Of a stretch of 64,000 nt of DNA, positions 26,674-37,925 are shown one piece after another. A model generated the notes under the pieces. That model did no database searches and was not told the DNA's origin. It saw only the letters and a list, made by a program, of their open reading frames with translations. The stretch is from Octopus sinensis (Eukaryota), in contig NC_043025.1 in assembly GCF_006345805.1 (NCBI RefSeq), forward strand, positions 3,596,001-3,660,000, given 5' to 3'. Numbering within the stretch: the stretch's first letter is position 1; each line of letters begins with the position of its first letter. Both the position numbers and the translations under genes were made by a program.

Positions 26674-26873
26674 TCACTTTACATCTGATGACAGACATTT
26701 GAGTGCATCAAGGCACTCAGCTTCCTCGAGGGCATCTCCAAGTGTTTTGAGTGTTTGTTTCTCTGGATCACAACTTTTAAACCATTTGTGCAACACCATG
26801 TAGCCCTGTTTCACAGTGTCTTTAGAATCGTCGTGAATTTCCAGTTCAGAAGTTTCAACTCCTAAGAAAATCC
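26674..26873 (-). CDS. Terminal coding exon of the ANK-RING-Death-domain gene (second half of the Death domain)
   Basis: Acceptor ctttttgtatcttttgcag|; the 200-bp exon reads (G)IFLGVETSELEIHDDSKDTVKQGYMVLHKWFKSCDPEKQTLKTLGDALEEAECLDALKCLSSDVK*, matching the DD pattern LG..E...I.....Q...ML..W......T...L..AL. Confidence 0.85.
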
Positions 26874-27623
26874 CTGCAAAAGATACAAAAAGAAGAAATA
26901 ATTATAACAACATCAACAATAATATAAAAGATGTCTCCTGTAGGTTGTTCTAACAAAGAAACTTCAAGAGAGAAATTTTGAAAATAGTCAAGAAATATGG
27001 AAAATGTAGGACATTGTTCTCTGTTTGTATGAATTCTGATTAAAAAGTAACAAAGTTGTTGGAAAAGAAGATTAAAACGGAGAAAATTGTTTTTTTAAAA
27101 GTATTGAAAATTACATTTGAGAGAATTTCTGGTAAAGAGATGGCAGGGAAAATGGTTGTGTGGGTAATAGCATATGAGACCCTAAAGAATCAATTAATAT
27201 CACCCAAAGAGTCACATTATCTCATCCATCTATCCATTTTCTCTACCCTCTGTTCATAAAAGGGTTGTGGGGGGTAGAGTCGCCAGGGAACCCCTTCAAA
27301 GTTACTTTCATCTTACTGTCCAGTTGGATTCTCAAGCTTCACCAATTAAGACTTTAGATATTATCCAACAATCTCATTCTTGGTCTATTCCTTGGTCTCC
27401 GGTCAAGTGGCTCAGCTTAAAGAATATCCGTCTTGCAATTACCACCACTCGACTATAAAAAGTGATCTACCACACAATTCTCTCTTTTTGCCTGGCTCTC
27501 TCTGGCACTTTCTCTTTTAGTCTTAACTTTTCGCCTATCCACTGGTTACTCAACTCGTGTGGTCAGACACAGCTAGACTAACGTCGCTCTCTTATAGTGG
27601 CCACCACCAGACAAAACCACCAC

Positions 27624-27627
<4 letters not shown>

Positions 27628-27703
<76 letters not shown>

Positions 27704-27708
27704 TATAT
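27628..27708. repeat. (TA)n microsatellite
   Basis: Direct reading. Confidence 0.95.
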
Positions 27709-28464
27709 TCATTCTGGTGTTTCATGCATTCACCTCATACCAATAACAAGAGATTCCAAATTATCAATATCAGTGTAATATACATTCTGAAAACCTGTCT
27801 TTACTTCATTACTTGTTATGCATGACACGAGCACCACAGAACACAGCGAAGAGAAACCCTACATGCCGGCTTCTTCACTAAAAACGTCTCAGCATTTAGA
27901 AAAAGTGGAGACTGAACCATCAAGCAATACCAGTCATACTACGGACACCTGGACCAATTAAAATACAAATAAGCATGACACCAGAATGGTCTTAATTACA
28001 CAAAGTACAAAATATAATACTGTTAGGTACACACCACATATTTTAGAAGACACCAGCTTAACCATTTTGGGTTCATGACTCGTAATAAGGACCTCTTTCA
28101 CTGGCTGAATGCCACAATTTAGAGAGAAGTTGATAACGGAGAGGTTTTAGAGTTTCAGCTAGCAGGAAAGAAGACAGGAGTGACCAGCATCTCCGCCATA
28201 CACCTACATACAATTAAACACTTTATCTGAGTAAAGTGTGTTCTTCAACTTAGACAAACACTGGACAGTGGAGAGGCAAAAATGCTGCACCACATTCAAC
28301 TGACGACTGCATGCGAGTGAAGTGTGATCGTCAACTAGATGGACACTTGACAGTGGAGAAGCTACAACACGTCACTCAAAATACACTCTGTCCTGTTAAA
28401 ATGGACACAGTCAATGATGTAGTCCTGTGATCCCAAGTAAAAGACAGCGGCATCACACAAGAAA

Positions 28465-29015
28465 AAAATGGACAATGTGAACAATACAATGGTATTCTTT
28501 GAAAGCTATAGAACTTGCCTGCCACACTAGAAAACTTGGAAATTTTAGGAGGTTGTTTTCACACAATCCATTCTCTGTTTTGGACAGTAATGTAATTCCC
28601 TATGAATAAATTTGTAATCTTTCCAGACAATTTCTAAATGGGACATCAATCATAACTTGGTTGACTAAACCGGGGTCTGTTATTTTGAGTCCGAATATGA
28701 CCCTTTAGTGGATGAGGTTGAATTAATTGAATCACCCCCCTCCCTCAGTATACCCAGGTCATGAAATTAGTGTCTCTGTGCAATCTATCACGTTACAAAC
28801 TTCCCAACAGGACTCTGACAATCGAATGATCAGTGATATTTCTTTTGACCAATCTCCAATGAACTCCGGATTCAATCACATCTCCGGAGCTTATTCATTT
28901 ATTATTATATCAATCACAGAGAGAGAAGCCTCTGCCAGTTTGGCCTCACTTGTGAATATTCATTTTCCGGTAAATTCCCTCAGGGGAATCCTCTCTTTTT
29001 GCCTGGGGAGAATAG
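28465..29015 (+). mobile_element. Decayed Gypsy-like LTR retrotransposon integrase C-terminus with possible polypurine tract
   Basis: NGQCEQYNGIL, GTSIITWLTKPGSVIL and SEYDPLVDEVELIE; ggggagaa at about 29004. Confidence 0.7.
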
Positions 29016-34984: not shown

Positions 34985-35104
34985 TTCGAAACGACAATGC
35001 CAAAACATGTTCATTCCCTTCGTTATTTAGTACCACAGTTTCCTTTAAGACAGGCAACTGAGAGACGTAGGTCGAAGGTCGGAGTGGTGGTGTGTGAGGT
35101 ATAT
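34985..35104 (-). CDS. Probable exon of the ANK-RING-DD gene (Pro-rich linker); 3' boundary uncertain
   Basis: The phase-1 acceptor ttctgttgacag| is in frame with the upstream donor. It reads (Y)IPHTPPLRPSTYVSQLPVLKETVVLNNEGNEHVLALSFR up to a GTCAGT donor (120 bp). Without that donor the frame runs to a stop at about 34830. Confidence 0.45.
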
Positions 35105-35338
35105 CTGTCAACAGAACCAGTCATGTGAATATAATCAAAATAGATGTTCTTTGTTTCATCTCCTATCAACTCCATTTTCTATTTAGTGTTCTTCTTACTA
35201 TTGTTGTGTGGCCTTTACTCAAGACACCAGTGAAGTATAATGTATTGGTAGAATAAAAACTAAACACGCATATAAACATGATTATGTACAAAATAGAAAA
35301 TTCACCGATTTGTTTTGGCTTTGCTAGGGAATACTTAC

Positions 35339-35405
35339 AGTGATGGGAAAAGGGATTTAATTTTTCTTTCAAATCTGGGTTCATAACAAGGTCCAACGGG
35401 GTCGC
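35339..35405 (-). CDS. 3' part of the ankyrin-repeat exon of the ANK-RING-DD gene
   Basis: ATPLDLVMNPDLKEKLNPFSHH followed by a strong phase-1 donor |gtaagt; TPLDL is a terminal ankyrin motif. Confidence 0.7.
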
Positions 35406-35552
35406 ATATATACGACAGGCTTATTCTTTGTAAGCCCAGTACTTATTCTATCGGTCTCTTTTGCCGAACCGCTAAGTGACAGGGACGTAAACACACCAGC
35501 ATCGGTTGTCAAGCAATGTTAGGGGGACAAACACAGACACACAAACACACAT

Positions 35553-35624
<72 letters not shown>

Positions 35625-37848
35625 TATATACGACAGGCTTCTTTCAGTTTCCGTCTACCAAATCCATTCACAAGGCATTGGTCGGCCCAGGGCTATAGCA
35701 GAAGACACCTGCCCAAGATGCCACGCAGTGGGACTGAACCCAGAACTATGTGGTTGGTTAGCAAGCTACTTACCACACAGCCACTCCTACGCCTATATAT
35801 ATATATATACATATATACGACAGGCTTCTTTCAGTTTCCATCTACCAAATCCATTCACAAGGCATTGGTCGGCCCGGGGCTATAGCAGAAGACACCTGCC
35901 CAAGATGCCACGCAGTGGGACTGAACCCGGAACTATGTGGTTGGTTAGCAAGCTACTTACCACACAGCCACTCCTACGCCTATATATATATATATACATA
36001 TATACAACAGGCTATTTCAGTTTCCGTCTACCAAATCCATTCACAAGGCATTGGTCGGCCCGGGGCTATAGCAGAAGACACCTGCCCAAGATGCCACGCA
36101 GTGGGACTGAACCCGGAACTATGTGGTTGGTTAGCAAGCTACTTACCACACAGCCACTCCTACGCTATATAATATATATACATAATACGACAGGCTTCTT
36201 TCAGTTTCCATCTACCAAATCCATTCACAAGGCATTGGTCGGCCGAGGCTATAGCAGAAGACACCTGCCCAAGATGCCACGCAGTGGGACTGAACCCGGA
36301 ACTATGTGGTTGGTTAGCAAGCTACTTACCACACAGCCACTCCTACGCCTATATATATATATATACATATATACGACAGGCTTCTTTCAGTTTCCGTCTA
36401 CCAAATCCATTCACAAGGCATTGGTCGGCCCGGGGCTATAGCAGAAGACACCTGCCCAAGATGCCACGCAGTGGGACTGAACCCGGAACTATGTGGTTGG
36501 TTAGCAAGCTACTTACCACACAGCCACTCCTACGCCTATATATATATATATACTATATACGACAGGCTTCTTTCAGTTTCCGTCTACCAAATCCATTCAC
36601 AAGGCATTGGTCGGCCCGGGGCTATAGCAGAAGACACCTGCGCAAGATGCCACGCAGTGGGACTGAACCCGGAACTATGTGGTTGGTTAGCAAGCTACTT
36701 ACCACACAGCCACTCCTACGCCTATATATATATATATATACATATATACGACAGGCTTCTTTCAGTTTCCGTCTACCAAATCCATTCACAAGGCATTGGT
36801 CGGCCGGGGCTATAGCAGAAGACACCTGCCCAAGATGCCACGCAGTGGGACTGAACCCGGAACTATGTGGTTGGTTAGCAAGCTACTTACCACACAGCCA
36901 CTCCTACGCCTATATATATATATATACATATATACGACAGGCTTCTTTCAGTTTCCGTCTACCAAATCCATTCACAAGGCATTGGTCGGCCCGGGGCTAT
37001 AGCAGAAGACACCTGCCCAAGATGCCACGCAGTGGGACTGAACCCGGAACTATGTGGTTGGTTAGCAAGCTACTTACCACACAGCCACTCCTACGCCTAT
37101 ATATATATATATACATATATACGACAGGCTTCTTTCAGTTTCCGTCTACCAAATCCATTCACAAGGCATTGGTCGGCCCGGGGCTATAGCAGAAGACACC
37201 TGCCCAAGATGCCACGCAGTGGGACTGAACCCGGAACTATGTGGTTGGTTAGCAAGCTACTTACCACACAGCCACTCCTACGCCTATATTATATATATAT
37301 ACATATATACGACAGGCTTCTTTCAGTTTCCGTCTACCAAATCCATTCACAAGGCATTGGTCGGCCCGGGGCTATAGCAGAAGACACCTGCGCAAGATGC
37401 CACGCAGTGGGACTGAACCCGGAACTATGTGGTTGGTTAGCAAGCTACTTACCACACAGCCACTCCTACGCCTATATATATATATATATACATATATACG
37501 ACAGGCTTCTTTCAGTTTCCGTCTACCAAATCCATTCACAAGGCATTGGTCGGCCCGGGGCTATAGCAGAAGACACCTGCCCAAGATGCCACGCAGTGGG
37601 ACTGAACCCGGAACTATGTGGTTGGTTAGCAAGCTACTTACCACACAGCCACTCCTACGCCTATATATATATATATACATATATACGACAGGCTTCTTTC
37701 AGTTTCCGTCTACCAAATCCATTCACAAGGCATTGGTCGGCCCGGGGCTATAGCAGAAGACACCTGCCCAAGATGCCACGCAGTGGGACTGAACCCGGAA
37801 CTATGTGGTTGGTTAGCAAGCTACTTACCACACAGCCACTCCTACGCC
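35406..37848 (-). repeat. Family-1 SINE followed by a homogenised tandem array: 12 head units of about 187 bp
   Basis: Units end (ccactcctacgc[c]) at 35793, 35980, 36165, 36349, 36536, 36722, 36910, 37097, 37284, 37472, 37661 and 37848. Each has A box tggctgtgtggtaag and B box ggttcagtccc. Confidence 0.95.
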
Positions 37849-37925
37849 ATAGTTATTGATATCTGTTTGTGTTTGAGGTTTGTAATGAAAAGAACGAACA
37901 ACGTGAACATGCAACATTGCCTTAA
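37849..37925 (-). pseudogene. 5' part of the interrupted ankyrin exon
   Basis: AMLHVHVVRSFHYKPQTQTDINNYG; joined to ATPLDL it gives consensus ankyrin spacing (12 residues between the LL position and the G of GxTPL). Confidence 0.55.

What the first reader, a model, noticed from the sequence alone, without database searches (positions are those of the whole stretch)
26674..37925. Hidden minus-strand gene with ankyrin - RING-like - Death domain architecture
Six short exons the ORF track does not link splice in phase 1 with GT-AG sites: 35405-35339, 35104-34985 (boundary uncertain), 33199-33059, 31275-31225, 29636-29565 and 26873-26674. They read ...ATPLDLVMNPDLKEKL...CQSCGQMVICEEC...TCLEC...KEKDLLKVAKKLGNNWWQVGIFLGVETSELEIHDDSKDTVKQGYMVLHKWFK...TLGDALEEAECLDAL...*. 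Seen: exons, phases, motifs. Known: ankyrin+RING is the Mind-bomb-type E3 layout, and Death domains are innate-immune/apoptosis adaptors; canonical MIB1/MIB2 have no Death domain. Inference: a shuffled invertebrate E3-ligase/DD adaptor built from symmetric phase-1 exons.
Basis: partly seen in the sequence, partly recalled or inferred. Interest (0 to 1): 0.78.

Follow-up and report, generated by a model that had tools for sequence, protein, structure and literature searches.

The report
Truncated octopus RING–Death-domain gene remnant
The exons are real, but they form a 5'-cut-off copy, with no ankyrin repeats and a damaged RING, of an octopus-only family of ankyrin–RING–Death-domain proteins that databases already list as "MIB2-like".

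Summary
The six minus-strand pieces exist, carry GT-AG sites and splice into one open 216-aa frame ending at 26674. Four are supported by homology: the remnant of the ankyrin-cap exon (35405-35339), the RING exon (33199-33059) and two Death-domain exons (29636-29565, 26873-26674). The Death domain is genuine: Pfam 25.7 bits against a cut-off of 22.6, and a family profile hits PIDD and RIPK1 Death domains at about 1e-10. Exons 2 and 4 have no homology support.

The ankyrin–RING–Death layout is real for a family of more than 50 annotated Octopus "MIB2-like" proteins. Every hit spanning RING plus Death domain that was checked for taxon is from Octopus.

This locus is not an intact member.
- No ankyrin exon exists anywhere in the 64 kb.
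- The cap exon is cut at a SINE, with an in-frame stop just upstream.
- As assembled, two 1-nt indels shift the frame across the first RING Cys pair, and the RING His is Gln.
- The O. vulgaris orthologue has a stop in Death-domain exon 5.

Most likely this is a decaying, unprocessed partial paralogue. A short Death-domain-only product is not excluded, and the frameshifts could be assembly errors. Interest is low to moderate.

The parts
35339..35405 (-). Remnant (last ~22 codons) of the family's 177-nt ankyrin-cap exon. It reads ATPLDLVMNPDLKEK..., has Met at 35384-35382 and a GT donor at 35338. There is a 1-nt deletion at ~35360 relative to O. vulgaris.
   Evidence: Homology to the intact paralogue L002 starts only at ~35405. 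An in-frame TAA lies at 35423-35421.
35416..35560 (-). 3' part of a tRNA-derived SINE-like interspersed repeat that abuts the truncated exon.
   Evidence: five other copies in the window at 90-95% identity; sequence.
34985..35104 (-). It is an open 120-nt stretch with AG/GT sites but no homology support, and is probably not an exon.
   Evidence: No counterpart exists between cap and RING in any relative. It has a stop in the frame used by the O. vulgaris orthologue.
33059..33199 (-). RING exon. The family frame reads CLFCEEKVSTL|KCQSCGQMVICEECGTEPNSTCLEC. An extra G at ~33166 splits it between two frames. The His ligand is replaced by Gln.
31225..31275 (-). It is a candidate 51-nt phase-1 linker cassette and remains unverified.
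   Evidence: AG/GT, open. (53 nt, so frame-breaking, in O. vulgaris). (no homology to family linker exons). It has the same length and position as the family's 51-nt linker exon.
29565..29636 (-). Death-domain exon 5 (helix 1: SRKLKEKDLLKVAKKLGNNWWQV), phase 1-1.
   Evidence: E=5e-10. O. vulgaris has TGA at the family-invariant Trp at 29575.
26674..26873 (-). Death-domain exon 6 (helices 2-6) with the TGA stop at 26676-26674.
   Evidence: E=6e-31.
35606..37848 (.). 187-bp tandem array (12 copies) of SINE-derived units.
   Evidence: About 2.1 kb of the array (window 35581-37663) has no counterpart in the O. vulgaris orthologous region.

Best explanation
The locus is an unprocessed (intron-containing), 5'-truncated partial paralogue of an Octopus-restricted gene family. 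Intact members of that family are ankyrin repeats + zf-C3HC4_3 RING + variable linker cassettes + a C-terminal Death domain, annotated 'E3 ubiquitin-protein ligase MIB2-like'.

Shown: only the tail of the ankyrin-cap exon, the RING exon and the two Death-domain exons survive. The cap exon is cut at a SINE. No ankyrin exon lies anywhere in the 64 kb. The RING has lost its His ligand and, as assembled, its first Cys pair. The Death domain is intact in this genome but carries a stop codon in the O. vulgaris orthologue.

Inferred: the copy can no longer act as an ankyrin-RING E3 ligase and is decaying. If it is still transcribed from the Met at 35384, it would give a ~165-185 aa Death-domain protein with a dead zinc-finger remnant. 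That product could only bind, or compete for, Death-domain partners.

For intact relatives the likely mechanism, inferred from domain knowledge, is as follows. The Death domain docks the protein into homotypic Death-domain complexes. The ankyrin repeats hold a substrate. The RING recruits an E2 to ubiquitylate that substrate.
For: Exons and frame.

Family and architecture. Pfam finds Ank, RING and Death in relatives. In the AF2 model of paralogue P0005, Foldseek's top hit is the MIB1 ANK domain, and the Death-domain part matches the ankyrin-G Death domain at TMt 0.76.

The Death domain of the window: Pfam 25.7 bits against GA 22.6. The family profile hits PIDD at 2.4e-10, RIPK1 at 1.3e-9 and ANK3 at 2.3e-9.

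No ankyrin part: tblastn with 57 relatives and a full-family HMM against all six-frame fragments hit only exons 1, 3, 5 and 6.

Truncation: the intact paralogue's cap exon is 177 nt, and homology in the window starts at ~35405, directly after a SINE copy and an in-frame stop. The same junction is present in O. vulgaris, whose gene model starts at the Met in this exon.

RING damage.

Decay: exonic indels number 3 against 4.0 expected from flanking sequence. There is a nonsense codon at an invariant Trp and a frame-breaking exon 4 in O. vulgaris. The neighbouring copy in O. vulgaris also has a frameshifted RING exon and no Ank.

No protein from this locus is on record.
Against: The Death-domain exons keep every family-invariant residue. 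They show dN/dS 0.27 at dS 0.80 against the neighbouring copy. That means long-term constraint on at least one lineage, but it does not isolate this one.

Exonic substitutions between the two genomes are fewer than expected: 2 against 6.4, P=0.046. All splice sites and the whole ORF are intact in the window.

The two window frameshifts compensate each other and may be assembly errors. Of 51 indels against O. vulgaris, 41 are 1-nt, 31 of these are deletions in the window against 10 insertions, and most are outside homopolymers.

No expression data could be consulted.
Confidence: 0.6

Rival explanations
1. The locus is truncated but still functional. It encodes a short ankyrin-less protein, starting at the Met at 35384, that has a zinc-finger remnant plus an intact Death domain. 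This protein would work as a Death-domain adaptor, or as a decoy that competes with the full-length ankyrin-RING-Death ligases. The O. vulgaris stop would be a lineage-specific or polymorphic loss.
For: There is an open frame with intact GT-AG sites. The Death domain passes the Pfam GA and keeps all family-invariant residues. dN/dS is 0.27. Exonic substitutions fall below expectation. RING+DD-only and DD-only relatives are annotated: P0059, P0053, P0003. The O. vulgaris gene model joins exon 1, the RING exon and exon 6 in one transcript.
Against: The orthologue has a stop at an invariant Trp of helix 1. No protein from this locus is in 15 billion catalogued sequences. The RING is degenerate. 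Indels occur in exons at the background rate. The promoter region is SINE and tandem repeat.
Confidence: 0.32
2. This is the reader's model: a complete ankyrin-RING-Death gene whose ankyrin exons lie upstream, within 35.4-37.9 kb or beyond the window.
For: The family architecture is real. Octopus introns are long; the O. vulgaris model spans 78 kb.
Against: No ankyrin-coding fragment was found on either strand of the 64 kb. The cap exon lacks its first ~110 nt and is preceded by a SINE and an in-frame TAA. The only nearby AG would need a phase-1 upstream donor, whereas the family's preceding exon ends in phase 0. The region 35.6-45.7 kb is tandem repeat and satellite. A plus-strand C2H2 zinc-finger ORF lies at 55.5-57.8 kb. 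There are no ankyrin exons in the 10 kb upstream in O. vulgaris either.
Confidence: 0.05
3. The frameshifts in exon 1 and the RING exon are assembly errors. The true sequence would then carry the family RING frame, as in O. vulgaris, giving an intact-frame RING(His->Gln)-linker-Death ORF without ankyrin repeats.
For: The indel spectrum against O. vulgaris is dominated by 1-nt events: 41 of 51, with a 31:10 deletion bias in the window, mostly in non-homopolymer context. At both exonic sites the O. vulgaris base count restores the family frame.
Against: The errors could equally be in the other assembly. The two events compensate each other, which real mutations under selection for the downstream frame could also do. 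This cannot be resolved without reads. It does not change the absence of ankyrin repeats or the His->Gln change.
Confidence: 0.4

Closest known systems
Octopus 'E3 ubiquitin-protein ligase MIB2-like' ankyrin-RING-Death paralogues (e.g. O. bimaculoides XP_014783123.1 = P0002; P0005 on CM046629.1)
   Same: The RING exon and both Death-domain exons are homologous (38% identity over the whole reader peptide to P0002; Death-domain identity to relatives 44-67%). The exon layout is the same (cap exon, RING exon, phase-1 linker cassettes, 72-nt and ~200-nt Death-domain exons), as is the C-terminal ...EEAEC..AL.CLS motif.
   Different: The window copy has no ankyrin repeats. Its cap exon is cut at a SINE. 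The RING His is Gln and, as assembled, the first Cys pair is out of frame. It is not annotated.
Mind bomb 1/2 (MIB1, MIB2)
   Same: For the family: ankyrin repeats whose best structural match is the MIB1 ANK domain (8v0e), followed by a C-terminal zf-C3HC4_3 RING. From the literature, MIB2 acts on the Death-domain kinase RIPK1 (PMC5912950).
   Different: No MIB/HERC2 or ZZ domain appears in any Pfam result for the relatives scanned or in the precomputed lists. The Death domain is extra. By my own knowledge, canonical MIBs have none. The window copy lacks even the ankyrin part.
Mollusc IAPs with BIR-DD-RING layout (oyster BIRC11-type) and vertebrate cIAP1/2 (BIR-CARD-RING)
   Same: One polypeptide combines a Death-fold domain with a zf-C3HC4_3-type RING E3 module in a lineage-expanded family (PMC8917759).
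   Different: The targeting module differs (BIR instead of ankyrin) and so does the order (Death fold before the RING, not after). No sequence relationship was tested.
Death domains of PIDD1, RIPK1 and ankyrin-G/B
   Same: These are the best solved-structure relatives of the window/family Death domain: profile E 2.4e-10, 1.3e-9 and 2.3e-9, and TMt 0.76 to 4o6x for the paralogue model.
   Different: The similarity is remote (about 20 bits for the single sequence). The surrounding architecture is different (LRR-ZU5-UPA, kinase-RHIM, ZU5-UPA).
O. bimaculoides LRR-GPS-7TM adhesion GPCR with a C-terminal Death domain (XP_014788728.1 = P0080)
   Same: It carries the same family-type Death-domain tail: the family profile aligns 17-215 to residues 1077-1282. 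This Death domain was noted by Ritschard et al. 2019 (PMC6408891). It hints that the module moves between genes.
   Different: The N-terminal context is different. It may be a chimeric gene model. No such exons exist in the window.

Membership tests
Death domain (Pfam PF00531, Death-fold superfamily) | Profile match above the curated threshold over the whole ~85-residue domain | tested here: met
   Exons 5+6 score 25.7 bits against GA 22.6, covering profile positions 3-83 of 86. The full reader peptide scores 22.7 bits. A family profile that includes the window hits PIDD, RIPK1, ANK3, FADD, CRADD and TRADD Death domains.
Death domain (Pfam PF00531, Death-fold superfamily) | Six-helix bundle fold | tested here: inconclusive
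The model of paralogue P0005 (56% identical to the window in the Death domain) has pLDDT 82-89 there. It matches the ankyrin-G Death domain 4o6x at TMt 0.76, rmsd 2.2 over 86 columns. The fold is therefore inferred for the window by homology.
RING finger, zf-C3HC4_3 (PF13920) | Eight zinc ligands C-x2-C...C-x-H-x3-C-x2-C...C-x2-C in one reading frame | tested here: not met
   In the assembled frame, ligands 1 and 2 align to Val and ligand 4 (His) is Gln. In the family frame, intact in O. vulgaris, the spacing is canonical but His is still Gln.
RING finger, zf-C3HC4_3 (PF13920) | Profile match above the curated threshold | tested here: not met
   There is no hit in the window frame. The family frame scores 22.8 bits against GA 27.
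Ankyrin repeat proteins | At least one complete ~33-residue ankyrin repeat | tested here: not met
   Only ATPLDLV... survives. There is no Ank Pfam hit. Family-HMM positions 1-206 hit nothing in any six-frame fragment of the 64 kb. tblastn with 57 relatives gave the same result.
Mind bomb E3 ligases (MIB1/MIB2) | N-terminal MIB/HERC2 and ZZ domains plus Mib repeats before the ankyrin repeats | tested here: not met
   None of these appears in the Pfam results for the window peptide or for relatives up to 653 aa. The 'MIB2-like' name reflects only Ank+RING similarity.
Octopus ankyrin-RING-Death ('MIB2-like') family | Homologous RING exon and two Death-domain exons in family order with family exon boundaries | tested here: met
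Octopus ankyrin-RING-Death ('MIB2-like') family | Complete architecture (ankyrin repeats + intact RING + Death domain) in one open frame | tested here: not met
   There is no ankyrin part, the RING is compromised and the cap exon is truncated at a SINE.
Expressed protein-coding gene | Spliced transcripts that join the exons | not testable with these tools
   No RNA-seq tool was available. There are only two indirect pointers. The O. vulgaris gene model joins exon 1, the RING exon and exon 6. No protein from this locus is in the protein collection.

The most novel reading that the evidence does not exclude
The window's species may keep this ankyrin-less, RING-dead copy as a working Death-domain-only regulator of an Octopus-specific set of ankyrin-RING-Death E3 ligases. 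That family would itself be a lineage-specific invention that places a ubiquitin ligase directly inside PIDD/RIPK1-type Death-domain signalling complexes. Its RING-linker-Death module would be spread by exon shuffling, and also appears on an LRR adhesion GPCR.
Probability: 0.2. Interest if true: 0.55.

Novelty: new member of a known kind. Interest (0 to 1): 0.3.

Why it matters
For the window itself the result is mainly a correction. The locus is a truncated remnant, not a complete new E3/adaptor gene.

The useful by-product is the family. Dozens of Octopus genes named 'MIB2-like' are in fact ankyrin-RING-Death proteins without the Mind-bomb N-terminus. In this search the combined RING-plus-Death layout was seen only in Octopus, and no paper in the searchable library describes them. 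They would be candidates for cephalopod-specific wiring of ubiquitylation into cell-death or innate-immune signalling. Remnants like this one document rapid birth and death in the family.

Tried and rejected
I modelled paralogue P0005 instead.
- Exact look-ups of P0002, P0024 and the window's zinc-finger ORF found no record, so the window's species and assembly were not identified.
- I looked for DNA homology between exon 4 and the family linker exons. Scores were within the shuffle range.
- I looked for LRR or GPCR exons of P0080-type genes in the window and found none.
- ARAGORN found no tRNA-like genes in the SINE copies.
- Literature searches for an octopus ankyrin-RING-Death or 'MIB2-like' family returned nothing specific.
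- I rejected a chance-ORF explanation on the E-values.
- I rejected a processed pseudogene, because the introns are retained.
- I rejected true Mind-bomb orthology, because the MIB/HERC2 and ZZ domains are absent.

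
Full report
**What the sequence shows**

The window is octopus genomic DNA. Its 26.3-35.6 kb stretch aligns in reverse orientation to Octopus vulgaris chromosome OX597843.1 (locus L001) at 96.7-98.2% identity.

- Every internal boundary has an AG acceptor and a GT donor.
- The concatenated 651 nt read open in one frame for 216 codons, to TGA at 26676-26674.
- All the quoted peptides are present.

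**Which exons are real**

A search of the spliced peptide found three Octopus proteins.
- P0001 is an O. vulgaris gene model named 'MIB2 isoform X1'.
- P0002 is O. bimaculoides XP_014783123.1 'MIB2-like', which covers the whole query.
- P0003 is a Death-domain-only protein.

A second search with P0002 returned 56 proteins, all but two named and all of those from O. bimaculoides, O. sinensis or O. vulgaris. Most have precomputed Ank and zf-C3HC4_3 hits, and many also have Death.

I ran tblastn with all 57 proteins, and a profile HMM of 34 of them against every six-frame fragment of the window.

| Exon | Coordinates | HMM E-value |
|---|---|---|
| 6 (Death domain) | 26873-26674 | 6e-31 |
| 5 (Death domain) | 29636-29565 | 5e-10 |
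| 3 (RING) | 33199-33059 | 0.0045 |
| 1 (cap remnant) | 35405-35339 | 0.0064 |

Exon 2 (35104-34985) has no counterpart. Relatives go directly from ...LKEKL.TF...Q to the first RING cysteine. In the frame used by the O. vulgaris orthologue, exon 2 contains a stop.

Exon 4 (31275-31225) has the same length (51 nt) and position as a family linker exon. It has no protein or DNA similarity to such exons. It is 53 nt, and so frame-breaking, in O. vulgaris.

**The Death domain is genuine**

Exons 5+6 score 25.7 bits on Pfam PF00531 against a gathering score of 22.6, across profile positions 3-83 of 86. The single sequence finds RIPK1 and PIDD Death domains in the PDB at E~0.005-0.02. A 14-sequence profile that includes the window finds the following:
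- PIDD at 2.4e-10
- RIPK1 at 1.3e-9
- ankyrin-G at 2.3e-9
- Fas, FADD, CRADD and TRADD below these

Ankyrin repeats have pLDDT ~90, the RING ~76, the linker is disordered, and the C-terminal helical domain has pLDDT 82-89. Foldseek's best match is the MIB1 ANK domain (8v0e). The C-terminal domain superposes on the ankyrin-G Death domain 4o6x at TMt 0.76, rmsd 2.2 over 86 columns.

**The RING is compromised**

In relatives the RING reads C-x2-C-x11-C-x-H-x3-C-x2-C-x7-C-x2-C. The O. vulgaris orthologue reads CLFCEEKVSTLKCQSCGQMVICEECGTEPNSTCLEC. That is the same spacing with Gln in place of His, and it scores 22.8 bits on zf-C3HC4_3, below the GA of 27.

Relative to O. vulgaris, the window lacks one T in exon 1 (~35360) and has one extra G in the RING exon (~33166). 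Between these two points the assembled frame is shifted. The first Cys pair is therefore read as VCFVKRK..., and no RING profile hit remains.

The shifts compensate each other. In intact relatives (L002, the gene for P0005) and in O. vulgaris, the cap-exon/RING-exon junction is phase 2. Only the linker cassettes and Death-domain exon 5 are phase 1-1.

**There is no ankyrin domain**

In the intact paralogue the exon before the RING exon is 177 nt (FCTELK...GADFYHKN..APLDLIENGNLKEKLRTFLLSR). In the window, homology begins only at ~35405.

Directly upstream lie an in-frame TAA (35423-35421) and the 3' end of an interspersed SINE-like repeat. That repeat has five other copies in the window at 90-95% identity. 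Further upstream the order is:
- a 187-bp tandem array of SINE-derived units, 35606-37848
- a 7.6-kb (TGG)n-like array, 38065-45701
- a plus-strand C2H2 zinc-finger ORF at 55.5-57.8 kb

Family-HMM positions 1-206, which cover the ankyrin part and the cap, hit nothing in the window. They also hit nothing in the 10 kb upstream in O. vulgaris.

The junction is identical in O. vulgaris, so the truncation predates the split of the two genomes. The O. vulgaris gene model starts at the Met inside this exon.

**Is it still a gene?**

Evidence for decay:
- Between the two genomes, exons carry 3 indel events against 4.0 expected from flanking sequence, so there is no sign of selection against frameshifts.
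- O. vulgaris has TGA at the family-invariant first Trp of helix 1 and a frame-breaking exon 4.
- The neighbouring copy 55-70 kb downstream in O. vulgaris also has a frameshifted RING exon and no ankyrin part.
- No protein from this locus is catalogued.

Evidence against decay:
- The window's ORF and all splice sites are intact.
- The Death domain keeps every invariant residue.
- dN/dS against the neighbouring copy is 0.27 at dS 0.80. This measures both lineages together, not this one alone.
- Exonic substitutions number 2 against 6.4 expected, P=0.046.

A caveat cuts both ways. Of the 51 indels between the two assemblies, 41 are single-base. Of those, 31 are deletions in the window against 10 insertions, and most lie outside homopolymers. 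That pattern looks like residual long-read assembly error in one of the assemblies. The window's two frameshifts may therefore not be real. This would not restore the ankyrin repeats or the RING histidine.

**Family context and novelty**

An exhaustive profile search of 1.84 billion representatives gave 1340 hits at E<=0.001. Of the hits I sampled for taxon, every one that spans RING and Death domain in a single stretch is from Octopus. The sampled non-octopus hits (Acanthaster, Branchiostoma) match the Death-domain part only.

Relatives lack MIB/HERC2 and ZZ domains, so 'MIB2-like' is a naming artefact of Ank+RING similarity.

The RING-linker-Death module also occurs alone (P0059). Its Death domain sits at the end of an LRR-GPS-7TM protein (P0080), whose Death domain was noted by Ritschard et al. 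2019 (PMC6408891).

Death-fold plus RING combinations are already known in mollusc IAPs (PMC8917759). No paper in the library describes the octopus family.

**Verdict**

The locus is a new, unannotated, 5'-truncated member of an already annotated but uncharacterised Octopus family.

It is most likely decaying (about 0.6). It may be a surviving Death-domain-only gene (about 0.3). An intact ankyrin-RING-Death gene is very unlikely (about 0.05).

Interest is low to moderate for the locus. The family is the more interesting lead.

Noticed in passing
window 35606-37848: A tandem array of 12 copies of a 187-bp unit made of a tRNA-derived SINE-like element plus (TA)n, at 97% identity between copies. 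About 2.1 kb of it (window 35581-37663) has no counterpart in the orthologous O. vulgaris region. This is either a recent amplification or a collapse in the other assembly.
   Followed up: partly
window 38065-45701: A 7.6-kb degenerate (TGG)n-like array with GC skew near +1. It produces spurious 2636-aa and 1109-aa His/Pro/Thr-rich ORFs on the minus strand. The orthologous array in O. vulgaris is only ~1.2 kb (L001 8276-9436).
   Followed up: partly
window 55469-57787 (+): A single 772-aa open reading frame that encodes many tandem C2H2 zinc fingers (zf-H2C2_2 at 602 bits; HMMER reports 20 matched stretches). It fits the known octopus C2H2-ZNF expansion. An exact product look-up found no record.
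   Followed up: partly
window 23276-23370 (-): An exon 100% identical to residues 123-154 of the O. vulgaris model P0001. That model splices from an internal GT 24 nt before the Death-domain stop codon into this exon. It then continues to LRR exons and a second RING/Death remnant 45-70 kb further on, outside the window. It is probably a read-through or chimeric gene model.
   Followed up: partly
L001 71444-88098: The neighbouring family copy in O. vulgaris has a frameshifted RING exon, three tandem 78-nt linker cassette exons (APKFEDRCVQTEATCQELGAASQAIG), a 51-nt linker exon and intact Death-domain exons, again without ankyrin exons. LRR exons lie just upstream at 64.5-66.1 kb.
   Followed up: partly
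protein P0080 (O. bimaculoides XP_014788728.1): An LRR + GPS + 7tm_2 adhesion-GPCR model that ends in the same family-type Death-domain tail. It is either a real fusion or a chimeric annotation. Its Death domain was noted in PMC6408891.
   Followed up: partly
window 26260-35581 vs L001 9805-19095: Of 51 indels between the two assemblies, 41 are single-base, with a 31:10 excess of deletions in the window, mostly outside homopolymers. This suggests residual long-read assembly errors in one assembly. Frameshift calls anywhere in this window should be treated with caution.
   Followed up: partly
window 653-1381 (-) and 25315-25617 (-): Retroelement debris: a 242-aa ORF with weak endonuclease/reverse-transcriptase-type (Exo_endo_phos) similarity, and a 100-aa ORF with no Pfam hit that by eye resembles the C-terminal tail of non-LTR element ORFs.
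   Followed up: partly
window 8415-9614: An extremely AT-rich low-complexity block; the 8001-10000 bin has GC 0.088. It is flanked by two ~860-bp segments (7583-8443 and from 9887) that both align to the same O. vulgaris interval. This suggests a local duplication around an expanded AT-rich array.
   Followed up: no
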